Source of the DNA: Octopus sinensis
Taxonomy: Eukaryota
Assembly (NCBI RefSeq): GCF_006345805.1
Contig: NW_021825932.1
Coordinates: 1-13,996, forward strand
Direction of reading: 5' to 3'
DNA length: 13,996 nucleotides
Under the pieces are notes generated by a model, which worked only from the letters and a program-made list of their open reading frames with translations, had not been told where the DNA came from and did no database searches. The translations under genes and the position numbers were made by a program. This document shows, in pieces, positions 95-13,996 of this stretch. Every line of letters begins with the position of its first letter. The first letter of the stretch is position 1.

Positions 95-133
95 TACACA
101 TTGGCTGGCAAGCGGTGGGGAGAAACACAAAGA
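95..133 (-). mobile_element. Short fragment of a cephalopod-type tRNA-SINE body (central region next to a GT/CA tract)
   Basis: Minus strand reads GTGTGTCTTTGTGTTTCTCCCCACCGCTTGCCAGCCAATGTG, resembling the central part of the SINE family seen at 3202-3313 and 4011-4189; recognised from memory only. Confidence 0.4.
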
Positions 134-202
134 CACACACACACACACACACACACAGATATATGCGTGCATATTCACGTGTGTGTGTGTGTGTGTGTGT
201 GT
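133..202. repeat. (AC)n 133-157 and (GT)n 179-202 microsatellites
   Basis: Directly visible dinucleotide runs. Confidence 0.95.
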
Positions 203-458
203 AAATATATTCCGGCCCAACGACTTAAACCTACGATCATTAACGATATGTTGTATTAAAAATTGAGCGAAACGGATTTTAATTAACGAGAACCCCTTAT
301 AATATCACTTGACGAGGCGTGTCTGCAGCGAGTGATGCACCACAATCAATTGTACAAATATCCCACCCTCGAGGGATCATGCACGATGGGTCAAAACGAT
401 CGTCGTGAGCAACAACGTTTCTCGTATATTCCATTTTCCGTCTCTATCATTTGTTTCA

Positions 459-553
459 TATACATATACATACATACATATACATGTATATATGTTTACA
501 TATATATATATATGTATGTATACATACACACACACACCACACACACACCACAC

Positions 554-615
<62 letters not shown>
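459..615. repeat. Compound (TACA)n/(TA)n/(CA)n/(TA)n microsatellite
   Basis: Directly visible; explains the Y/I/H/T-rich ORFs in the ORF track. Confidence 0.95.
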
Positions 616-1559
616 ATTAGTGAATGGAAGAAATTTCGCAACTTTTCGCGACGTTAATAAATACCAAGTTACAGGACTTAGCAAACTTATCTGGCGTTTG
701 AAGAACGCGAATTCAGTTTTTAGGCTGGAATGGTCGATTTTGTCGGTGGCCCTCCCGTTTGATAGGGGCTGAAGGAGGTGTAATCTTTGTAACTCTGAGC
801 TTTTCCACATATTGTTCGCCAGAGGCCGTTTGGTAAACGGGCTTTTACAGACGCTTTTCGATGTCCCATTGGCGGCGTCATACTTATCTTACATATAAAT
901 GATACCTAAGACAATTAACACCTTGTTACCCTATTAAAATGAAAATAATTTTGGAAATAATTTTGAAAAAAACTTTTTAAAAAATCTCTGAATAACTCTT
1001 GCAAGGGGAATTACCCCCCTTAGGCGATTGGTCGGTTTTTTGTTTTTTAGAAGCAGTGCTCATTATCTAGCGCCCCTCGCCAACAACGGGGGCGCACACA
1101 TAGGCTAGTATACACATACATGCTTTTAGGTAGGTTTTGTCTCGCCCCTAAAAAATACACCCTGTATTCTTTAATATTCAGAACATTAGTTTTGGTCACA
1201 CAGACAACATCTCCACACCCCTTGCTCTCATTAATTCCTCTCCTACTAGATTTGACCGCGGCCTGACCTGTAAGTATTCCAACGGACCTTTTGTCGGCCC
1301 CCACCAACCCCCGATTTCAACGTACATTGATAAACAGTTTACCCATGGGCTCTTAAGGAGCGTCCTCGTTCGAATTGCTTTGCTGCGCCTCTGTTTTGTT
1401 TTGTTCTGACAACGTAATTCCTGGTTTTTCCTGAAGAGAAAGCTGCAATATGGTATCATTTAATCAGAATTTGGAAAATTGTGGCCTTTGAAACATGTGT
1501 AGAATGTAATAAAAGGAATTGTACAATCTTCGTTCAACTCATTTCTTCCATTCACTAAT
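616..1559. mobile_element. Non-autonomous TIR DNA transposon (MITE-like, unclassified), ~944 bp
   Basis: Perfect inverted repeat ATATAATTAGTGAATGGAAGAAAT (611-634) versus ATTTCTTCCATTCACTAATTATAT (1541-1564). Read as a 19-bp TIR flanked by TA (614-615, 1560-1561) or TATA. No transposase ORF inside. Confidence 0.7.
887..1108 (+). mobile_element. Non-autonomous Helitron, 222 bp, nested in the TIR element
   Basis: 5' A|TCTTACATATAAA (886|887). 3' GC-rich hairpin GCGCCCCTCG-CCAACAA-CGGGGGCGC (1070-1095), 9 nt spacer, then CTAG|T (1105-1108|1109). This fits the canonical Helitron TC...hairpin...CTRR ends with A|T insertion and no TSD. Confidence 0.65.
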
Positions 1560-3201: not shown

Positions 3202-3313
3202 TGGGCCTCTTTCAGTTTGTGTCTACCAAATCCATTTGCAAAGCTTTGATCGGCTCGAGGCTATAAAAGACAGTCACCCAAGATGTCACGCAGTGCGATT
3301 GAACCCAAGACCA
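3202..3313 (-). mobile_element. tRNA-derived SINE, 5' part
   Basis: Minus strand has B-box-like GGTTCAATCGC followed by a body homologous to 4050-4130 (CTATAGCC...AAAGC...GGATTTGGTAGAC); A box not retained. Confidence 0.7.
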
Positions 3314-4189: not shown

Positions 4190-4242
<53 letters not shown>

Positions 4243-4270
4243 TATATTGTATGTATGTATGTATGTATGT

Positions 4271-4302
<32 letters not shown>

Positions 4303-4346
4303 TGTATGTATGTATGTATGTATGTATGTATGTATGTATGTATATA
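4190..4346. repeat. (TA)n followed by (TATG)n microsatellite
   Basis: Directly visible. Confidence 0.97.
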
Positions 4347-4347
4347 A

Positions 4348-6278
4348 TTTCTTTATTAACCACAAAGGGTTTACATTAAGAAAACATTATGGACAGTACG
4401 GACAAAACAAAGAATGTTTACGTGTGTGAGTGTGTGTTGTTTTGAAGATTTTGCGTGTAAACCAACAAAACCAACAAAATTTTAAAAAATCCTCGATGTG
4501 TGATCCTCAGTAGGGAGGAGATGTTCGAGGGCCCCTCATTGAAAAACCCCATAAAAAAAACCTGGGTTCTCTGACCTTTGGGGCAGGTGCCTTTTTCCTT
4601 TCCTTTTCTCCAACTACAGGCATATGCTCAGGGCAGGCCCGTTCATTTGCACCATTCTTGCCATTTTCATCCACCTTTCAGCAAATTGGCGAGAAGATAA
4701 CCCTTCCCTCTCTACCTTTATTTTCCTTTTCAAGTGAAACTCGAAGAAGTTGATCAGGGATTGGCCAAAGAGAAAAGTGTTTGTCTTCAGCCCCTTCAAT
4801 CTCGTTCACCACCTTACAACCTCTTTCGCCATGGCCATCAGCCACTGAATACAGACCCGAAACCAGCTACCTTGAGGACTGCTACCAGGTATAGATGGTC
4901 GATCCTATCAAAAGCTTTAGACTGATCTAAATTGATCAGAGGCTCTACCCATGCCAAGTTCTTTAACCGCTTTCTCAATGATGTATCACATGAGGTGGAG
5001 GTTATAATGGATGAGTCTTTTCGGGATGGCATATGTCTGTGCCTCCCCTACCAAATCCCCGATGACAAGCACCAACATCGTAGGTGATACCTTGGCCAAA
5101 ATTTTGAACTCTGCATTCAGTAGAATTATGGTTGTCAATACAATCCCCCTTCTTCGGGTATTTTCTTAGCAACGCCACAGCTCCTCGGCCACAAAACTGG
5201 AAATTCTCCCATTCTGTTACCAGTTGCTGTAAACATTTGCTAAGAGGTCGCTGAAAAAGTCTGGCATGTAAGCGTAGAACTCTTAGAGCAGACCATCCAA
5301 ATCAGGCGATTTACCCCTCGTGCAGTTAGTCATTGCTTCCAGTATTTCAAAGGTTATTATCGGCCTTTCGCAGCGCTCCGCCGCCATCGCAGAGAATCGC
5401 GGCAGCCCGTCGCGGTTGGACGTGAAATCCATCTTGCGACCCGGTTGACCGCTGCTACCAAGCAGTCGAGCGAAGCGCTGCTGAAAAGCCGCACACATCT
5501 GTCTCGGATCAGTTATCATTTGCCCTTCGTGGCCCGACAAGGATCAGATCGTGGATTTATTTCCACGCAGTGTCTCTGCCACTCGATCCCATTGAACGGC
5601 TTTCGTCCCTTCGTGTCTAAGAGCTCATGCCTGAGTTCTGACAACGTAACCTTTGTGTTTCGCATTGAAGAATTGGTCGAGTGCCAATCTCATTGCGAGC
5701 ACGTCGGTCGCGATGCCTTTTCTAAAAGCCTCATCTAACTGCTTGACTCGCTCTGTCTCTACTCTGTTTCTTTCTACTGCCAGGTCAACCTGCACCAGTT
5801 CTCCTTTTTGATTTGATAGGCTTCGAAGATTTTCGAGTTTTCCCCGATGTCTACCGTCGCTGCAGCAGTTAGGCAAGGAATGGTTATTTCTTGCAGCATC
5901 TGTTGAATGATGATTTTGGCCAGTCTCTGATCTCAGTAGTAAAGAACTAACAACAGCTCCTCGCTTTTGAAGGAATTAGAGAGTGGTATTTGACTTCTTC
6001 GATGCGAAATCGAACGTCTACTATTCCACAATCCCTTCCTCTCTGTATATACTCCTTTAGATTCCAGACGGAACCTAAAGTTTTTGTATTTGAGACTCTG
6101 CGGCTTTAAACCGACTTTTATTTCGAACAATGTTGTCGAAAACGGAGTCGCAGTTTTTCCCAAGATGTTCTAAGAGATCTTTTTCGAAAAGATTGGCCCT
6201 GCTGCCTTTTTTGTCCTTTCTTTCAACAAAAATACAGTCACCGTTTGTTTTTGTTTTTAGTGCTAGTTCGTTTTTAGA
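4348..6278 (-). mobile_element. L1/Tx1-clade non-LTR retrotransposon, decayed, with two large internal deletions
   Basis: RT motif INLDQSKAFDRIDH (4838-5032 ORF); pre-RT GKSPDLDGL; linker LAVERNRVE...LALDQFFNAKH; C-terminal MAKEVV.WT...FHLKRK...ERW; AATAAA on the minus strand at 4352-4357 marks the 3' end; 5796-6200 looks like an ORF1 N-terminal fragment. Confidence 0.8.
4614..5795 (-). pseudogene. Remnant of L1/Tx1 ORF2 (linker, N-terminal half of RT, extreme C-terminus)
   Basis: ORF pieces 5625-5876, 5283-5540, 4838-5032 and 4614-4799 carry collinear ORF2 motifs with stops and frameshifts; the RT catalytic region and the endonuclease are absent. Confidence 0.75.
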
Positions 6279-6359
6279 GAAGAAGAAGAAGAAGAAGAAG
6301 AAGAAGAAGAAGAAGAAGAAGAAGAAGAAGAAGAAGAAGAAGAAGAAGAAGAAGAAGAA
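6279..6359 (+). repeat. (GAA)27 microsatellite
   Basis: 81-nt perfect run; source of the poly-Lys ORF. Confidence 0.98.
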
Positions 6360-6361
6360 TC

Positions 6362-7040
6362 ATTTAGGACAAACTAATGTGAATTGCAGAATGAACGACA
6401 CAACTGAGAACGACAAAGGCAGAATGTGTGGTGAAAAGGTTGAAAGACTCGGGCACATTGTACAACATGAAACTGGTACAACATGAATACAAACTACAAC
6501 ATAACAAGGTGGCAAGAATGATTCATTGGGAGCTCTGTGGAGATTATGGCTTGCAAAGAGCAAAAATGTGGTATGACCAAATCCTAGAACGAATTACTGA
6601 GAATGAAGATTGCAAAATCCTGTGGGATGCAGTGATTCAGTGTGGCCATTAGATTAAACATCGAAAGTCTGACATTGTTGGAGTGAATAGAAAAAAAATG
6701 CCTGATAATTGATATAATGACAACAGCATTGAAGAGAAAGAAGAAAAAGTGAACAACTGTGATGAACCGAAATGGGAGATATGCAGGTTGTGGGCAATGA
6801 GAAAGGTACTAATAGGGATTGGTGCACTTGGAAGTATCAGTACTCAACTACCAATGTGGTTCAAAAAGACTGGAACGAATGTAAAGAGGGAACACCTACA
6901 AAAATTAACATTGGTTGGAATTGCAAGAGTTCTTTGCAGGATTCTTGAAGTATGATTAATAAACAAGGGTCACCTTAGTCTGCTGGTTGTGGACAGTTGA
7001 CACTTTCCATCATTCCCAGCAAAATAAGATCACAGGTTCA
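6362..7040 (+). mobile_element. R4/Dong-clade LINE, 3' fragment, old and decayed (copy A)
   Basis: CCHC remnant (RMCGEK...HIV), HNKVARMIHW, ENEDCKILWD, IGIGALG, KLTLVGIARVL..ILEV* (stop at 6955), then a 3'UTR. Confidence 0.8.
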
Positions 7041-7052
7041 TATATATTATTA

Positions 7053-7092
<40 letters not shown>

Positions 7093-7100
7093 ATAAATAA

Positions 7101-7154
<54 letters not shown>

Positions 7155-7167
7155 AGTAGTAGTAGTA

Positions 7168-7204
<37 letters not shown>

Positions 7205-7205
7205 T
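7041..7205. repeat. (ATT)n 7046-7090 fused directly to (AAT)n 7091-7203 with a (GTA)n patch
   Basis: Directly visible; palindromic centre TTATTA|TAATAA. Confidence 0.95.
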
Positions 7206-7211
7206 AAAAAT

Positions 7212-7788
7212 ATGCCCTGATGCAGTACCAGGATGCCCTGATGCAGTACCAGGCAGTGGCTCTCATGGCTTCTGATCTTAACTGATTGGAAGTGTTATCA
7301 TGTACATTGTTTTGTCTTGGTGTAAAAGATGGGCTACAGCAAATATTCTGCTCAATACCACAGATTTGCTTGTCAGTTGTTTGACCTTAACCAGTTGACC
7401 ATGTCCCTTAGTGGCTGACGATATGTGCATCTCTGATCACGAGCAGAAGTAGTGGGGGAGCATCATAGCCATGTGTTGAGAGGGATTCTTTGGGGTTTGA
7501 ATAATTCACCTCTGGGAACGTGGGTGGTTCTTTCAACATCCTTAAACAACCCTTATTCGGGGACCTTTTGAGCGGGATGGGCTACTCAACCTGAAGAAAA
7601 TTCTAACTGGGCCCCACCTGCAAGGTCATGTGCTGTTTATCTTAATATGAGATCACCATGTCGCGCACATATGGTTGTGATGCATGTGCCTGGTGTACCT
7701 TTATCAGACGGGTAGTCATGATGGGTATATTGGGCTTCGTATATTTTACCCCAGTGTCACTTTGATGGCATGAACTGCTCTCTCACTC
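7212..7788 (+). mobile_element. Non-coding interspersed element, putative non-autonomous retroelement (copy B), with a duplicated 21-nt 5' end
   Basis: 7296-7788 matches 12515-13004 at roughly 93-94% (by eye); (AAT)n on both sides; no ORF; ATGCCCTGATGCAGTACCAGG occurs twice (7212-7232, 7233-7253). Confidence 0.85.
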
Positions 7789-7804
7789 AATAATAATGAT
7801 AATA

Positions 7805-9478
7805 TCACTATCACCACTCCTCTTTTGTTTAGCCTTAATACCTCTCTCAAAATTGCTCAATGTCGCGCAGTATGGATCTCTTATGATAATATAAAATATT
7901 TGATAAAAATATAAATCATCTCATTTACATGAATGATTTAAATCTCTTTGTAAAAAATGACCAACAACTACAGGGCTTACTAGCGATTGTTAAGCAATTC
8001 AGTGATGACATCAGGAGGCAATTTGGCCTCGATAAATGTGCAAAAGCTACCTTTATCAAAGGAAAAATGATAGAAACATCTAACGTTTACCTCAACCAGC
8101 AGAATGTCATAAAAGAGTTAGAACCAGCGGAGAGCTACAAGTACCTAGGGGTATTTGAAGGGGATGGAATCAAACATTCAGTGATGAGGGAAAGGATCAG
8201 GAGAGGATGTTATCGCAGAGTAAGAGCAATACTCAAGACAGAGCTGAATGCGAGAAACAGGATCAAAGCGATCAATGCTTTAGCCATACCAGTCGTGACT
8301 TACAGTTTCAATATCGTTAACTGGTCAATTAGTGAAATATGTAATCTTGACAGAAAAATACGAAAACTGTTGACAATCCATAGAATGCACCACCCTAAAG
8401 CAGATACAGAACGACTCTATCTGCCAAGAAAAGAGGGAGGCCGTGGACTTTTACAACTGGCATTAGCAATGAAAATTGCCACAATTAGCCTAGACCCCTT
8501 CCTGAAAAACTCTGAGGACTGGATGTTAAAGCTTGTCTCAAAACATGAAAACAAGAAAGCATCATACTCAGTAACAAAACAGGCAAAGGAATATCTAAGT
8601 GAATTCCGAATACAACAAATTCCGGAATTTGACATACGAGAAAAAAGCGCAGAAAAAGCTAAGCGCATGAAAACCCGTGCTAAAACTGCTGCCTTAGATA
8701 TTCTGACTGATAAATGGCAAGAAAAACCTGTCAATGGCAAATACCCAAAAAGAGCAAATATTGCCGAGGTTGACAAAGCCCTACCCATCAATGGCTAATG
8801 ACTTCTGGTTTAAAATCAGAAACAGCTGGGTCTATCATAGCAGCCCAAGATCAATGCCTACCTTGAAGAAACTACCAGGCCAACATATTAAAGAACGACA
8901 GCTGCCCAACATGTCGTGTACGTCAAAAACAAAATGAAACCATTGATCATGTTGTCTCCATGTGCAGTCTTCTTGCGTCCACAGAGTATCTCAACAGGCA
9001 TGATAGAGCAGCACTCTATATTCACTGGGTAATTTGCAAAAGCCTGGACTTGCCCCATGAAAAAAACTGGTGGGAACACAATCCACCTCCAGTGCTTGAA
9101 AATGACCACATCTCACTCCTCTGGAACTTCACCATTCAAACTGACAGAAAGATAGACGCGAATAGGCCAGACATCATATTGAAAGACTTCAGACAAAGAA
9201 CATGCCTCCTCATTGATATGACTGTCCCAATCAATATAAACGTATCTGTCAAGACCTACCAAAAACTGAGCAAATATAAAGATCTGGAAATAGAAATCAG
9301 CAAAATGTGGAACCTGAAGACTAAAACAATACCTGTTGTCATAGGTGACCTGAGAATGATAGCAAAAGGGGCTGACTGCTACCTAACTCAGATACCAGGA
9401 AACCCCAAAATGGCAGAAATTCAAAAGATGGTGCTCATGGGAACTGCCCATATCCTACGCAAAATACTTTCTATGTAA
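7805..9478 (+). pseudogene. Disabled RT/RLE ORF of copy C
   Basis: Catalytic motif reads YMND (7926-7937) instead of YMDD; zinc knuckle second Cys reads Arg (8921-8923); frameshift near 8783 and a TGA near 8864; ORF-track pieces 7929-8798 and 8960-9478. Confidence 0.88.
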
Positions 9479-9670
9479 TCTCAAGTTTTAAAACAAACAT
9501 AATTTTCTTATGGTTTCTTAAACATTCTCTAGAATAACACTATGTACAAAACCAAATATATGGCACACTGGGCATAACAACAACGTGAACTTCCAACCTG
9601 TTGTCTCTTGAGGTCTCTGAGTGAGACTTGGAGCCAACTCGTACAAATGTAAAGCAAAAGTCAAACATAA
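7805..9670 (+). mobile_element. R4/Dong-clade LINE, 5'-truncated inside the RT (copy C)
   Basis: Starts at SLSPLLFCLALIPL; includes thumb region, CCHC remnant, RHD, NRPDI..D..K restriction-like endonuclease, ~190-nt 3'UTR, then an (AAT)n tail. Confidence 0.9.
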
Positions 9671-9685
9671 AATAATAATAACAAC

Positions 9686-9741
<56 letters not shown>

Positions 9742-9744
9742 ATA

Positions 9745-9780
<36 letters not shown>
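9671..9780 (+). repeat. (AAT)n/(GATAAT)n tract between copies C and D
   Basis: Directly visible. Confidence 0.95.
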
Positions 9781-9781
<1 letters not shown>

Positions 9782-12494
9782 TATAACATCACAGAGAAAG
9801 CAAATATAACATCACAGAGAAAGATTTGCCTGAAATAAAAGAAAAGCTGAAGCAAGATATCCTTGCCAAAGCACAAAGGATCCGCCGGTACAAAACGCCA
9901 ACGCTTCTTTGAAGAAAACAAAAAGTTCAACTCCAACCCCAAAAGTCTACCAAGAACTGGGCAAAAATAAAATAGAAGTCACTGCAGCACCAACGGCAGA
10001 AGAATTGGAAGAATTCTGGAGAGAAATATGGTCGGCGAACGAACCACCAAAAAAGGAGTATCAAATAACAAACTCGGCATCTGAACAACTTTGGACCCCC
10101 ATAACAACTGAAGAGGTCACCCAGGCACTGCAAAGACTAAGCAACTGGAAGGCACCTGGGCATGACAAGATCCCCAACTTCTGGTTGAAATATCTAACAG
10201 GAATGCACAAAAAGCTGGCTGAAAACTTTAACAACGTACTAGCAGAGCCAGAGACAATGCCTGAATGGCTCACGAAGGGGAAAACCATCTTAATTCCCAA
10301 ATCAAATGCAACAGAAAAACCAGAAAACTACAGACCAATAACCTGCCTCCCTACTATGTTCAAGGCATTTACTGCAGTGATATCACAAAGGCTGAACAAG
10401 CACCTGGACGAAAACAAACTGTTCCCAGAAGAGAAGAAAGGATGCCGCAAAGACTCATATGGCTGTAAAGATCAACTAATGATTAATAAAGCCATAACTG
10501 AAGACAGCCACAGAAAGAAGAAAGGCCTCAGTATGGCCTGGATTGACTACAAAAAGGCGTTTGATAGCATCCCCCACACATGGATCCTCGAAACACTAGC
10601 CATAACAAAGTAGCACCAACAATCATAAAATTCATAGAGCACTCTATGAATAAATGGCAAACAGTCCTACACCTCCAAACAAAAGAGGGACTCATGAAAA
10701 CCAAAGACATCCCCATTAGAAGAGGAATATTCCAAGGAGACACGCTCTCTCCACTCCTTTTCTGCTTGGCACTGTCACTCTATCTGATATGCTAAATAGA
10801 ACTGGATGCGGATATAAATGTTACGGCAAAACGATCAGCCACCTTTTATATATGGATGACCTAAAACTATACGCTGCAAATGACAAACAGCTGGAAACAC
10901 TATTAAAGACAGTTCATGGATTTACCAAAGAAATAGATATGAAATTGGATTAGAAAAATGCGCCAAAGTAACCCTGAAAAGAGGAAGACTAGTAAGAGTA
11001 ACAACATCACACTAGATAAAACCAATGAAATAAAAGAATTAGACCAAAGCCAAACTTACAAATACTTAGGAATCCATGAACTAGATAAGACACAACACAC
11101 ACAAATGAAAGAGAAATAAAAAAAGAATATTATAGACGAGTTAGATCAATACTAAACACAGAGCTCAATGCTAAAAACAAGATAATAGGTATCAACTTTA
11201 GCTGTCCCAGTTATAAGTTACAGCTACAATATCCTTAACTGGACACGAAATGAACTGACCAAAATAGATAGGAAAACAAGAAAAATAATGACAGGATCTA
11301 GGATGCATCACCCAAAATCTGACATAGAAAGACTATATATACAACGTATAGAAGGTGGTAGAGGCCTTATACAGCTGGAAAACTACTATAAAATAACCAC
11401 CATAGGACTGCAAAAATATCTACTCAGAAGGAAGGAAAACTGATCCAGATAGCGGCAAAACACGAGCAAACAAAAAAACTGTTCTCAGTATTTAAGGAAG
11501 CTGACAAATACAAACAAGAAATCATACCACCTAATAAAAACATGAAGAAGAAGAAGAGATGAAGAAACAACAAAAGCTATAAAACAAATGAAATCCAAAC
11601 TAAAAATAGAACAGCAACGAACCATGATAAAACGATGGCAAGAAAAGCCCCTTCATGGTAAATACTGGACTAAACTAAACGCAAAAGAAATAGACAAAGA
11701 AAAATCCCAGCAATGGTTGAGAAGCTCAGGACTCAAAGCAGAGACAGAGGGATTTTTAATTGCAGCACAAGACCGAAGCCTCCCCACCAGAAATTACCAA
11801 AAACATGTAATGAAAAGAAATATTACAAGTAACTGCAGAATATGTGGAGATGGACAAGAAACAATAAATCATATTATCTCTAGCTGCCCAGTCCTGGCTA
11901 ACAAGGAATATATTCACAGACATGACAAAGTTGGAACCTACATACATTGGAAGCTATGTCAACATTATGGAATAACAACAGAAAAAAGACGGTATAGGCA
12001 CACACCAGAAAAGGTCACAGAAAACGAGAAAGCAACCATACTCTGGGATATGCCGATACACACAGATAGAGAAATTAAGGCCAACAGACCAGATATAGTT
12101 GTCAGAGACCATGAAGGAAAAAAATGCTTTCTAATTGATGTATCAATACCGGCTGATGACAACGTGTCTCTAAAAGAAATGGAGAAACTCTCAAAATACA
12201 AAGACCTGGAAATAGAGGTAACTAGAATGTGGAATCTGAAAACAGAAGCAATTCCTATCATAGTAGGTGCATTAGGCATGATAAAAAAATATTCAGACAA
12301 ATACATAACAAAAACACCAGAAAAAGACACATAACAAAAACATACAGAAAATTGCACTACTAGGCACACATCCTACGCAGAACACTTTCCATACAATAGC
12401 CATCAGAGCATCACAAATCACAGCACATACCCAAAGCACACAGAGCTGCGCTCGGTAGTGAAGTGAAAGCACGCTATAAAAAATAAAACTACTG
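9781..12494 (+). mobile_element. R4/Dong-clade LINE, 5'-truncated just upstream of the RT, young-looking (copy D)
   Basis: Complete RT (KAPGHD, NYRPITCL, WIDYKKAFDSIPH, GIFQGDTLSP, YMDD at 10849-10860), CCHC (CRICG...HIISSC), RHD, RLE (NRPDIVV...IDVSIP...KLSKYKDL), ~95-nt 3'UTR, (AAT)n tail. Confidence 0.93.
9804..12399 (+). pseudogene. Frameshifted RT/RLE ORF of copy D
   Basis: Collinear ORF pieces 9909-10613, 10580-10795 and 11588-12334; true C-terminus ILRRTLSIQ* ends at TAG 12397-12399; about ten short indels. Confidence 0.88.
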
Positions 12495-12514
12495 AATAAT
12501 AATAATAATAATAA
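12495..12514 (+). repeat. (AAT)n between copy D and copy E
   Basis: Directly visible. Confidence 0.95.
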
Positions 12515-13004
12515 TATCATGTACATTGTTTTGTCTTGGTATAAAAGATGGGCTTCAGCAAATATTCTGCTCTATTCCACAGATTTGCTTGTCAGTTGTT
12601 TGACCTTAACCAGTTGAGCATGTCCCTTTGTGGTTGACGATATGTGCATCTCTGATCACGAGCAGAAGTAGTGGGGGAGCATCATAGCCATGTGTTGAGA
12701 GGGATTCTTTGGGGTTTGAATAATTCACCTCTGGAAACAGAGTGTTTCGTTCAACATCCTTAAACAACCTTTATTCAGGAACCTTTTGAGTGGGATGAGT
12801 TACTCGACCAGAAGAAAATTCTAACTGGGTCCCACCTACAAGGTCATGTGCTGTTTATCTTGATATGAGATCACCATGTTGCACACATATGGTTGTGATG
12901 CATGTGCCTGGTGTACTCTTATCAGACGGGTAGTCATGATGGGTATACTGGGCTTCGTATATTTAACCCCAGTGTCACTTTGATGGCATGAACTGCCCTC
13001 TCAC
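12515..13004 (+). mobile_element. Second, 5'-truncated copy of the non-coding element (copy E), followed by (AAT)5
   Basis: Homologous to 7296-7788; lacks the first ~63 nt of the unit; tail 13005-13019. Confidence 0.87.
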
Positions 13005-13224
13005 AATAATAATAATAATTTTCTCTTTAATTTTCACAATGGAAACTTTTTAGAAAGTTGATACAATGCCTTGATACAGTAAATTCTAAATGTAACCATT
13101 TTCTCTCAAAACAGACATAAAACACGGAGGTTACAAATACATATTTTCAGCAGTTGAGACAAAAGTTTCTGGAACTCCAAGAAACAAGTCTCTTTCGGAA
13201 ACACCAAAATTATCGACGACATTG

Positions 13225-13365
13225 ACAAGAATAACAAAAACAAAAACACTAACAGCAGCAATAGTGTCATCAACTACAATAAAACCAAAACAAACATGGA
13301 CAACAGCAACAAAAACAAAATCAACAGCTAGTACTACTACAATAACACAAAGAACAAATCAAAAG
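13225..13365 (+). repeat. Highly degenerate (ACA/AAC)n low-complexity tract
   Basis: A/C-rich trinucleotide periodicity; gives the Thr-rich ORF 13222-13443. Confidence 0.6.
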
Positions 13366-13404
13366 ACGATTGCAGAAGACAATGGTAAACCCGAGAGTGG
13401 TCGT

Positions 13405-13996
13405 AACATAAAAGTTGAAACAAGAGGTATGTTACAAAGATAACAAGAAGAAAGTTTTTGTTAGTTTATTTCACAATTTTCACCTGATGTGATGAAAAAC
13501 GGTGTAGACCCAAAGTGCCGATATTGCAATGATGGGATTGAATCAGCGGACCCCCTAATCTCTGAGTGTAAGGTTTTAGCACCTGTAGATTACAAAGCAA
13601 GACATGATAGAGTTGGCCAATATCTACACTGGATAATGTGTTGGCATTATAAAATCAAAACTGCAGACAAATGCTACAAGCACCACCTTGAGGCTGTAAC
13701 TGAGGGAGCAAAATGTAACTATTCTTGGGACTTTCCAGTATGTACAGATCAGACCATCAAAGCAAAATAAAACCAGATATTGTTGAGAAAGACCAAAACA
13801 ATAAAGCCTGTTTATTGATTGACATGAGAAGACCCGTGACTATATTATCTCGGAAAAAAGAATTGATAAGATCAGAAAATTAAAGATTTGCCAATCGAAA
13901 TCGAAAAGATGTGAAATCTCAAGACGATTATAATACCAGTGATTGTAGGAGCACTTGGAATGATGAAAAAGGAAATGAAAATTATTTAAGAATGAT
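13405..13996 (+). mobile_element. R4/Dong-clade LINE, decayed 3' fragment running off the window (copy F)
   Basis: KVETRG, CRYC zinc-knuckle remnant, RHDRVGQYLHW, WDFPVCTD.TIKA, KPDI, IPVIVGALGMM motifs with stops and frameshifts. Confidence 0.82.

What the first reader, a model, noticed from the sequence alone, without database searches (positions are those of the whole stretch)
7212..7788. Non-coding ~0.55-kb element that behaves like a passenger of the Dong/R4 machinery (second copy 12515-13004)
Seen: two copies about 93-94% identical with different neighbours, the same 3' end, (AAT)n tails, (AAT)n upstream and variable 5' ends. There is no ORF and no clear Pol III A/B box, unlike the tRNA-SINEs at 3202 and 4011. 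The head is structured: TGCCCTG/CAGGCA, and a 9-10 bp hairpin GCTTCTGATC-ttaact-GATTGGAAGT at ~7269-7294. A CCAG-TGTCA-ctttga-TGGCA hairpin (7751-7770) loosely mimics the LINE 3'UTR inner stem. Inference: a non-tRNA, microsatellite-targeted non-autonomous retroelement mobilised in trans by an RLE-clade LINE, a rarely described pairing.
Basis: partly seen in the sequence, partly recalled or inferred. Interest (0 to 1): 0.75.

Follow-up and report, generated by a model that had tools for sequence, protein, structure and literature searches.

The report
Octopus (AAT)n-tailed non-coding retroposon
This is a 556-base non-coding "hitch-hiker" retrotransposon of octopus genomes. It ends in an AAT repeat, lands in AAT microsatellites, and most likely borrows the enzymes of the Dong/R4-type jumping genes piled up beside it. 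It is a tidy example of a little-described parasite-of-a-parasite pairing, not a new kind of element.

Summary
Copy A (7212-7788) and copy B (12515-13004) are 93.9% identical. They have different neighbours, the same 3' end (…CTCTCAC(TCA)), (AAT)n tails and (AAT)n upstream. They have no ORF over 50 aa, no tRNA or Rfam match and no B box.

The host is an octopus. The same family occurs in O. bimaculoides and O. sinensis at about one copy per 14 kb of sampled DNA. Every copy shares the 3' end, and 5' ends vary (unit positions 1, 1, 60, 338, 407, 513).

One O. bimaculoides copy starts at exactly the same base as copy A (ATGCCCTG…), with unrelated DNA upstream. So the unit is a discrete 556 nt (7233-7788). 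Copy A carries an extra exact 21-nt copy of its own 5' end.

It is therefore a non-autonomous non-LTR retroposon, not the 3'UTR of the neighbouring LINEs.

The Dong/R4 partnership is inferred, not shown. Support:
- same tail, target and orientation;
- no target-site duplications;
- a 5'-junction duplication seen only in copy A and in a Dong copy.

No sequence is shared with the three Dong 3'UTRs available. The head is not significantly structured. An RTE-type partner is not excluded.

Novelty: a new variant of a known kind. Interest is moderate.

The parts
7090..7211 (+). (AAT)41 microsatellite immediately upstream of copy A (presumed target tract)
   Evidence: TRF period 3, 41 copies; sequence
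7212..7232 (+). Extra exact copy of the element's first 21 nt (ATGCCCTGATGCAGTACCAGG). It forms a 5'-junction tandem duplication private to copy A.
   Evidence: TRF 21 nt x 2.0, 100%. One of only two >=20-nt tandem duplications in the window. The O. bimaculoides full-length copy has a single 21-mer.
7233..7788 (+). Copy A: full-length 556-nt unit of the non-coding retroposon
   Evidence: nhmmer model positions 1-554. Same first base as L003 17896. No ORF over 50 aa. No Rfam or tRNA match.
7268..7293 (+). 10-bp hairpin (3 G·U pairs) in the head. It is real as sequence; its significance is unproven.
   Evidence: Fold. The head z-score of -0.55 is not significant.
7755..7770 (+). Small 3' stem-loop TGTCA-ctttga-TGGCA, about 18 nt before the tail
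   Evidence: Sequence. Present in the full-length fold. Conserved in 5 of 7 copies. No similarity to Dong 3'UTRs.
7789..7803 (+). (AAT)~5 tail of copy A (aataataatgataata). It abuts the 5'-truncated Dong-1 copy.
   Evidence: Sequence; alignment
12495..12514 (+). (AAT)7 upstream of copy B. It is also the tail of the Dong-2 LINE copy.
   Evidence: TRF. The same LINE family ends in the same way in Logan contig L001.
12515..13004 (+). Copy B: 5'-truncated copy (model positions 60-552), 93.9% identical to A
13005..13019 (+). (AAT)5 tail of copy B
   Evidence: TRF
7804..9666 (+). Dong-1: 5'-truncated RLE-LINE copy (from mid-RT, through the C-terminal zinc knuckle and nuclease, to the 3'UTR), followed by (AAT)37 at 9667-9779. 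Candidate source of the machinery.
   Evidence: ORFs; tblastn 8181-9475; sequence
9779..12494 (+). Dong-2: 5'-truncated RLE-LINE copy with RVT_1 and zf-RVT domains and an R2-like C-terminus. Its first 23 nt are tandemly duplicated (9779-9824) directly after (AAT)n.
   Evidence: Pfam; PDB R2 protein match E 3.4e-5; duplication 21/23; 90% identical protein P0001 with the same 3' end and AAT tail
13020..13996 (+). Dong-3: another RLE-LINE copy starting right after copy B's tail. It runs off the window.
   Evidence: ORF with zf-RVT; tblastn/blastx 13348-13992

Best explanation
The element is a 556-nt, non-coding, non-autonomous non-LTR retroposon of octopus genomes.

**Proposed mechanism.**
- Its RNA starts at ATGCCCTG… and ends in …CTCTCACTCA(AAU)n.
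- A LINE-encoded endonuclease/reverse transcriptase nicks an (AAT)n·(ATT)n microsatellite.
- The (ATT)n DNA end pairs with the RNA's (AAU)n tail and primes reverse transcription (target-primed reverse transcription).
- Incomplete copying gives the graded 5' truncations.
- Occasional re-copying of the last ~21 nt at the template's 5' end gives the terminal duplication seen in copy A.

**Likely enzyme donor.** The most likely donor is a Dong/R4-type LINE carrying a restriction-like endonuclease. Several families of these sit head-to-tail with the element in the same AAT tract. Landing pads include Dong tails and the (ATT)n tails of the abundant octopus SINE, which the element enters in the opposite orientation.

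**What is shown:** a discrete unit, a family in at least three genomes, a TPRT-type truncation pattern, an AAT tail, association with AAT targets, no coding capacity and no Pol III head.

**What is inferred:** the identity of the enzyme donor, how the RNA is transcribed (unknown promoter; possibly Pol II or read-through), and how the 5' duplication arises.
For: **Family and unit.**
- Copies at 89-95% identity occur in O. bimaculoides (L003, L005) and O. sinensis (L004).
- All share the 3' end. 5' ends fall at model positions 1, 1, 60, 338, 407 and 513.
- Two copies (window 7233 and L003 17896) begin at the same base with unrelated upstream DNA.

**Tail and target.**
- Tails are (AAT)5 to about 25.
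- Three of six copies have (AAT)>=3 directly upstream, against a background of 0.0042. My binomial estimate is about 1.5e-6.
- No target-site duplications are visible.
- Three loci have the tail fused to the reverse-complemented 3' end of the (ATT)n-tailed SINE.

**Link to Dong.**
- On the + strand the window reads: (AAT)41, A, (AAT)5, Dong-1, (AAT)37, Dong-2, (AAT)7, B, (AAT)5, Dong-3. All are in one orientation.
- The LINEs have RVT_1 and zf-RVT domains and an R2-like C-terminal region.
- They end in (AAT)n.
- Dong elements are documented (TAA)n-specific LINEs, including one in a mollusc (PMC3812793).
- Dong-R4 is abundant and recently active in Octopus vulgaris (PMC13282606).

**Shared junction signature.** The only two >=20-nt tandem duplications in the 14-kb window are the first 21 nt of copy A and the first 23 nt of the Dong-2 copy. 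Both lie directly after (AAT)n. None of that size occurs in 110 kb of other octopus sequence.

**Age.** One insertion is orthologous in O. bimaculoides and O. sinensis (90.9% identity between orthologues). A and B are 93.9% identical to each other. This suggests activity both before and after that split.
Against: - BLASTN (word size 7) and a profile nhmmer search find no similarity between the element and the Dong 3'UTRs in the window (Dong-1, Dong-2 and the 6360-7040 fragment); L001, a Dong-2-family relative, was covered only by the nhmmer search. R2-type LINEs normally need their own 3'UTR (PMC3414825).
- Three of six copies, the most truncated ones, lack a clean upstream (AAT)n.
- Only about 113 kb of octopus DNA could be sampled. 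The discrete 5' end rests on two copies, and the junction signature on two cases.
- No full-length Dong was available, so neither its 5'UTR nor other Dong families' 3'UTRs could be compared.
- No transcript, promoter or polymorphic insertion was seen. Six short words from the element found nothing in the stored part of an O. vulgaris transcriptome.
- Octopus RTE LINEs also end in a microsatellite (PMC9115989).
Confidence: 0.6

Rival explanations
1. The element is the same kind of non-autonomous retroposon, but it is driven by an APE-type LINE (for example octopus RTE) whose RNA also ends in an AAT-type microsatellite. The AAT-tract association would then arise only from tail-to-target base pairing at nicks, not from a sequence-specific nuclease.
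For: - Octopus RTE-2_OV has a microsatellite making up most of its 3'UTR, and RTE is the LINE with direct evidence of current activity in octopus (PMC9115989).
- The element shares no sequence with the Dong 3'UTRs seen here.
- Half of the copies lack a clear upstream AAT tract.
Against: - No target-site duplications flank any copy.
- The orientation is strict, and the element sits head-to-tail with Dong copies in one AAT tract.
- The 5'-junction duplication is shared with a Dong copy and absent from 110 kb rich in SINE and other LINE copies.
- The repeat unit of the octopus RTE tail is not known to me and could not be checked.
Confidence: 0.17
2. The 556 nt is not a separate element. It would be the long 3'UTR, or a 3'-transduced segment, of an autonomous LINE family not represented in full in the sampled DNA. 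The two 'full-length' copies would be truncations at a favoured point.
For: - Only two copies define the 5' end.
- 5' junctions next to AAT tracts could favour microhomology at A/T-rich positions.
- Copy B lies directly downstream of a Dong copy.
Against: - Two independent copies in different genomes start at the identical base. In copy A the duplicated 21-mer starts at that base too.
- None of six copies continues upstream into coding sequence.
- B is itself 5'-truncated and is separated from the complete Dong-2 3' end by that LINE's own tail, so it is a separate insertion.
- tblastn with 120 Dong C-termini finds nothing in the element.
Confidence: 0.08
3. It is a conventional Pol III SINE whose small-RNA-derived head has diverged beyond recognition.
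For: - Its size is at the upper end for a SINE.
- The head contains AGTGG- and GATTGGAAG-type words at roughly tRNA-like spacing (my reading).
- Rfam and ARAGORN also fail on the obvious tRNA-like SINEs of the window and loci, so these tools are insensitive to SINE heads.
Against: - No B box within 2 mismatches falls in either copy, although the window's tRNA-SINEs do give such matches.
- A-box-like hits are at chance.
- No Rfam family matches even at E<=10 on the isolated element.
Confidence: 0.1

Closest known systems
R2 SIDEs (short internally deleted elements of R2; Eickbush & Eickbush 2012, PMC3414825)
   Same: - They are about 0.5-kb non-coding passengers of a site-specific LINE with a restriction-like endonuclease.
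- They insert at the LINE's own target.
- Their 5'-junction variation matches that of the LINE.
- They have no tRNA head.
   Different: - SIDEs carry the parent R2's 5' ribozyme and 3'UTR. Here no ribozyme family matches, and the 3' end does not match the available Dong 3'UTRs.
- SIDEs are low-copy in rDNA. This family is dispersed at roughly one copy per 14 kb of sampled DNA.
Dong / R4-clade LINEs ((TAA)n-specific; PMC3812793; Dong-R4 in octopus, PMC13282606, PMC8967140)
   Same: Same tail, same target microsatellite and same orientation. They occupy the same tract, and one Dong copy has the same kind of 5'-terminal duplication.
   Different: The element has no ORF, is 556 nt long, and shares no detectable sequence with the Dong copies present.
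LP-SINEs of molluscs (short retroposons with a LINE-derived 5' end instead of a tRNA head; PMC4758252)
   Same: Both are short mollusc retroposons without a Pol III small-RNA head, presumably using a LINE-type promoter.
   Different: LP-SINEs have ordinary target-site duplications and a head matching a known LINE 5'UTR. Here the origin of the head is unknown and could not be tested, and insertion is in microsatellites.
Octopus tRNA-derived SINEs (OK, OR1, OR2; Ohshima & Okada 1994, cited in PMC4758252; 'OK SINE/tRNA-Core')
   Same: Both are abundant octopus non-autonomous retroposons. The common SINE in the sampled loci also carries a trinucleotide tail.
   Different: Those SINEs have tRNA-like heads with a B box. 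The common SINE's tail is (ATT)n in its own sense, the complement of this element's tail. The two lie tail-to-tail.

Membership tests
Non-LTR (TPRT-mobilised) retroposon | Copies share one end (3') and differ by graded truncation at the other (5') | tested here: met
   Model positions 1-554, 1-551, 60-552, 338-554, 407-554 and 513-553. All copies end at …CTCTCACTCA.
Non-LTR (TPRT-mobilised) retroposon | 3' simple-repeat or A-rich tail of variable length | tested here: met
   (AAT)5, 5, 9, 10, 8 and about 25
Non-LTR (TPRT-mobilised) retroposon | Dispersed copies with unrelated flanks, in more than one genome | tested here: met
   The window, O. bimaculoides CM046623.1 and O. sinensis VCDQ01004541.1
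Non-LTR (TPRT-mobilised) retroposon | Filled versus empty orthologous site for a copy of this family | tested here: inconclusive
   The L003 9.9-kb copy has no counterpart in L004, but the region is rearranged. A clean empty site was found only for a different ~150-bp insertion in an (AAT)n tract.
SINE in the strict sense (SINEBase definition) | Pol III promoter head derived from tRNA, 5S, 7SL or snRNA | tested here: not met
   No ARAGORN hit. No Rfam hit even at E<=10. No B box within 2 mismatches, and A-box hits at chance.
SINE in the strict sense (SINEBase definition) | 3' region shared with the partner LINE | tested here: not met
   No similarity to the 3'UTRs of Dong-1, Dong-2, L001 or the 6360-7040 LINE fragment. 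Other octopus LINE families were not available.
SIDE-type internally deleted LINE derivative | 5' and 3' ends identical to those of a parent LINE | tested here: inconclusive
   The 3' end is not met for the LINE copies at hand. The 5' end could not be tested because no full-length Dong lies in the window or loci.
SIDE-type internally deleted LINE derivative | 5' self-cleaving (HDV-like) ribozyme, as in R2 and R2 SIDEs | tested here: not met
   No ribozyme family in Rfam matches the element. The TGCCCTG/CAGGCA arms are only 9 nt apart, too close for an HDV-like nested fold (my reading).
3'UTR of an autonomous Dong/R4 LINE | Longer copies continue upstream into the LINE ORF | tested here: not met
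   Two copies stop at the same base, with (AAT)n or unrelated DNA upstream. No Dong-like coding signal lies in or directly upstream of any copy.
Dong-type (TAA)n-targeted insertion | Insertion inside (TAA)n/(AAT)n in a fixed orientation, without a visible target-site duplication | tested here: met
   Three of six copies have (AAT)>=3 directly upstream against a background of 0.42%. All six AAT-tailed elements of the window pile are on the + strand. Copies sit tail-to-tail with (ATT)n-tailed SINEs. The sample is small.
Dong-type (TAA)n-targeted insertion | Mobilisation by the Dong protein | not testable with these tools
   Needs a TPRT or retrotransposition assay, or young polymorphic insertions correlated with Dong activity.
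LP-SINE (LINE-promoter head) | Head homologous to a LINE 5'UTR | not testable with these tools
   No full-length octopus LINE 5'UTRs could be retrieved.

The most novel reading that the evidence does not exclude
This is a headless, high-copy (order 10^4-10^5) retroposon mobilised by Dong/R4-type LINEs through little more than its (AAU)n tail and a small 3' stem. It colonises the (ATT)n tails of the main octopus SINE and the tails of Dong itself. Transposon tails would then serve as landing pads for a second tier of parasites, and AAT tracts would grow into nested piles. The 21-23-nt terminal duplication would be a footprint of the RLE reverse transcriptase re-copying the template's 5' end.
Probability: 0.4. 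Interest if true: 0.6.

Novelty: new variant of a known kind. Interest (0 to 1): 0.45.

Why it matters
- Passengers of LINEs with a restriction-like endonuclease are known mainly from the rare, low-copy R2 SIDEs in Drosophila rDNA. A dispersed, abundant passenger of a microsatellite-specific Dong/R4 LINE would show that this old LINE lineage can support SINE-scale parasitism.
- It would help explain part of the large 'unclassified SINE/unknown' fraction reported for octopus genomes (PMC13282606).
- It would give a mechanism for the growth and nesting of AAT microsatellite loci.
- It has a practical side. The element already contaminates gene models: a UniProt octopus protein starts in its antisense strand. 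It should be masked as a defined family.
- If Dong protein accepts this RNA, the minimal 3' signal could be mapped. That is of interest for RLE-LINE-based insertion tools.

Tried and rejected
- **Coding remnant.** tblastn with 120 Dong-like C-termini found nothing inside the element.
- **Six-frame protein search.** A concatenated six-frame translation searched against 5.8 billion proteins hit only one octopus gene model, which begins in the antisense strand. This gave the host, not a function.
- **Known RNA families.** The Rfam whole-window and focused scans, and ARAGORN, gave nothing.
- **Relation to the neighbouring LINE UTRs or window SINEs.** BLASTN at word size 7 and profile nhmmer gave nothing.
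- **More copies from public collections.**
  - Two metagenome scans and one prokaryote-genome scan with conserved 22-23-mers were empty, as expected for animal DNA.
  - An exact-protein look-up of a window ORF found nothing.
  - The closest LINE proteins sit on contigs of about 1 kb.
  - A representative search with the octopus sushi-domain protein returned giant proteins from unrelated animals, so it gave no further octopus loci.
- **Clean empty site for the L003 9.9-kb copy.** The orthologous O. sinensis region is rearranged.
- **Literature and transcriptome.** Three signature words were not found in any held paper. Six words were not found in the stored first ~400 kb of an O. vulgaris transcriptome. 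That search is exact-match and line-wrapped, so it is weak negative evidence.
- **Significantly structured head.** Rejected on shuffle z-scores.
- **Covariation analysis.** Not attempted, because dispersed copies decay neutrally after insertion.

Full report
**Observation**

The window holds two copies of a non-coding repeat, at 7212-7788 (A) and 12515-13004 (B).
- The repeat finder reports them as two collinear blocks (7296-7519/12515-12738 and 7515-7786/12733-13004).
- A pairwise alignment and BLASTN give 93.7-93.9% identity over about 490 nt.
- A extends 84 nt further 5'.
- Both copies stop at …CTCTCAC(TCA) and are followed by (AAT)5.
- A is preceded by a 41-unit AAT tract and B by seven AAT units.
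- Sequence beyond the AAT tracts is unrelated.
- The longest ORF is 50 aa.
- ARAGORN and Rfam find nothing in the element, including a focused scan at E<=10.
- Neither copy has a B box within two mismatches. A-box-like words occur at chance frequency.

7212-7253 is an exact 2 x 21-nt tandem duplication.

**Host and family**

A six-frame translation of copy A, searched against the large protein collection, hit one protein only. This is UniRef A0A0L8FVA6 of Octopus bimaculoides, whose first ~45 residues are the antisense translation of the element.

Three loci were then fetched:
- the locus of the RefSeq version of that gene (L003);
- its upstream neighbour (L005);
- the orthologous O. sinensis contig (L004).

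Together these give about 70 kb of O. bimaculoides and 29 kb of O. sinensis.

A profile built from the copies finds the following:
- in O. bimaculoides, a full-length copy (L003 17896-17344, minus strand, model 1-551);
- three 5'-truncated copies: L003 9966-9748 (model 338-554), L005 5016-5163 (407-554) and L003 19400-19361 (513-553);
- an older 77-79% fragment covering only model positions 98-270;
- in O. sinensis, the orthologues of three of these.

That is about five insertions in 70 kb. One of them is the copy that led to the locus, so the count is biased upward. If representative, the genome holds a very rough 10^4-10^5 copies.

The orthologous pair (L003 17-kb copy and L004 16-kb copy) is 90.9% identical. 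A and B are 93.9% identical to each other. The family was therefore active before the split of these two species, and probably after it.

**What kind of element**

Every copy shares the same 3' terminus, followed by (AAT)5 to about (AAT)25. The 5' ends are scattered. This is the signature of target-primed reverse transcription.

The key question was whether the element is just the 3'UTR of a LINE. The evidence is against that:
- The O. bimaculoides full-length copy begins ATGCCCTGATGCAGTACCAG…, at exactly the base where copy A's 21-mer begins.
- It is preceded by three ATA units and then unrelated DNA.
- The 21-mer is single in that copy.

The unit is therefore 556 nt (7233-7788), and copy A carries an extra copy of its own first 21 nt. 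No copy continues upstream into coding sequence.

Copy B follows the complete 3' end and tail of a LINE copy but is itself 5'-truncated. It is therefore a separate insertion into that tail.

**Target**

- Three of six independent copies have (AAT)>=3 immediately upstream. The background frequency of that in the sampled loci is 0.42%. My binomial estimate for 3 or more of 6 is about 1.5e-6.
- No copy has a recognisable target-site duplication.
- In three loci the element's AAT tail runs straight into the reverse-complemented 3' end of the abundant octopus SINE. That SINE's own tail is (ATT)n. The element therefore sits in SINE tails, in the opposite orientation.
- AAT tracts are live targets. 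O. bimaculoides has a ~150-bp insertion in the middle of a tract that is uninterrupted in O. sinensis.

**Partner**

On the + strand the window reads:

(AGA)27 | LINE fragment 6360-7040 | (ATT)16 | (AAT)41 | A | (AAT)5 | Dong-1 (7804-9666) | (AAT)37 | Dong-2 (9779-12494) | (AAT)7 | B | (AAT)5 | Dong-3 (13020 to the end)

.

The LINE copies have these properties:
- They encode RVT_1 and a zf-RVT zinc knuckle.
- Their C-terminal region aligns with the R2 retrotransposon protein in the PDB. That is the restriction-like-endonuclease type of LINE.
- A 90%-identical relative on a Logan contig ends in the same 3'UTR and AAT tail.

Dong elements are the documented (TAA)n-specific LINEs (PMC3812793). 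Dong-R4 is abundant and recently active in octopus (PMC13282606, PMC8967140). I did not test clade membership by phylogeny.

The shared tail, target, orientation and residence make these LINEs the obvious candidates.

One further link emerged. I scanned the window for tandem duplications of period 15-40 nt and found exactly two:
- the 21-mer at the 5' end of copy A;
- a 23-mer (21 of 23 matching) at the 5' end of the truncated Dong-2 copy.

Both lie directly after an AAT tract. The same scan of 110 kb of other octopus sequence, full of SINEs and other LINE fragments, found none of 20 nt or more. R2 reverse transcriptase is known to jump templates at RNA 5' ends in vivo (PMC3414825). Re-copying of the terminal segment is a plausible origin of the duplication, but this is inferred.

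**Against the Dong assignment**

- BLASTN at word size 7 and the profile search find no similarity between the element and the Dong 3'UTRs in the window; the L001 relative was included only in the profile search. R2-type enzymes usually recognise their own 3'UTR.
- The three most truncated copies lack a clean upstream AAT tract.
- Octopus RTE, the LINE with direct evidence of current activity, also ends in a microsatellite (PMC9115989). I could not check its unit.
- No full-length Dong was obtainable. A SIDE-type origin (Dong 5' end plus 3' end) or an LP-SINE-type head (PMC4758252) therefore could not be tested.

**Structure claims**

- The head does not fold better than shuffled sequence (z -0.55 and -0.30).
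- The 3' ~110 nt is only marginally better (z -1.2 and -2.1).
- The whole unit is modestly structured (z -2.3). This is largely through a long-range pairing, 7460-7476 with 7667-7683.
- No ribozyme family matches.

I therefore treat the hairpins as features to test, not as evidence.

**Verdict**

- The reading as a non-tRNA, non-autonomous, AAT-microsatellite-associated retroposon is well supported (about 0.9).
- The Dong/R4 partnership is the best explanation but is inferred (about 0.6 for the whole statement).
- Rivals are an RTE-type partner, an unseen longer parent LINE, and a decayed Pol III head.
- Relative to what is known (R2 SIDEs, LP-SINEs, Dong itself), this is a new variant of a known kind.
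- The sequence is almost certainly already in automated octopus repeat libraries as an unclassified family. I found no description of it, or of a Dong passenger, in the papers I could search.

Noticed in passing
window 6278-7212: A third RLE-LINE 3' fragment lies at 6360-7040. It is only ~33% identical in protein to the Dong-like C-termini. It is preceded by (AGA)27 and followed by (ATT)16, which flips directly into (AAT)41. This is a head-on junction of complementary microsatellites (inverted repeat 7052-7130/7135-7213). It suggests a second LINE lineage with an (ATT)n tail. The flip is unexplained.
   Followed up: partly
window 9779-9824: A 23-nt tandem duplication (21 of 23 matching) of the first bases of the 5'-truncated Dong-2 copy lies directly after (AAT)37. 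It is the same kind of junction as at 7212-7253. These are the only two such duplications in the window.
   Followed up: yes
L003 18879-19140; L003 9600-9747; L005 5164-5400; L004 17950-18180: The abundant octopus SINE (head with a B-box-like GAGTTCAAATTC) carries an (ATT)n tail. In one case it is flanked by (ATT)n on both sides, so it may itself be microsatellite-targeted by a LINE with an (ATT)n tail. ARAGORN and Rfam do not recognise its head.
   Followed up: partly
L003 ~19141-19290 versus L004 ~18130-18180: O. bimaculoides has a ~150-bp non-coding insertion (…gtcagtctacttcatttttt) inside an (AAT)n tract. The tract is uninterrupted in the O. sinensis orthologue. This is a clean filled/empty pair for another AAT-targeted element of unknown family.
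   Followed up: partly
L003 17344-17896 (minus strand): UniRef A0A0L8FVA6 (an O. bimaculoides 'Sushi, vWF-A, EGF and pentraxin' gene model) begins with about 45 residues translated from the antisense strand of this element copy. The RefSeq model XP_014786617.2 is 642 aa long, against 655 aa (97% identical over 99% of its length). This is probably an annotation artefact or an exonised repeat.
   Followed up: partly
L003 28403-28559; L004 24788-24943: An orthologous 77-79% related fragment covers only unit positions 98-270, with a 17-nt internal gap. It lies in an intron just upstream of an exon. It may be an older subfamily or the source of the element's body.
   Followed up: no
window ~4700-5900 (minus strand): A reverse-transcriptase fragment of another LINE (…KSPDLDGLL…, …DQSKAFDRIDH…) lies next to the (TGTA)n/(TATATGTATGTA)n arrays at 4190-4346. 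It was not classified.
   Followed up: no
window 123-627, 2030-2112, 4294-4362: Rfam 'miRNA' matches (mir-3149, mir-297, mir-1277 and others) all fall below the gathering scores and lie on AC/GT, AT and TGTA microsatellites. They are artefacts of low complexity.
   Followed up: yes
window 7773-7778 and 12991-12996 versus the O. bimaculoides and O. sinensis copies: Both window copies read GCATGAACTGC where all five copies from the other two genomes read GCATGC(G/A)(C/T)TGC. This shared difference suggests a distinct subfamily or a different octopus species as the source of the window.
   Followed up: no
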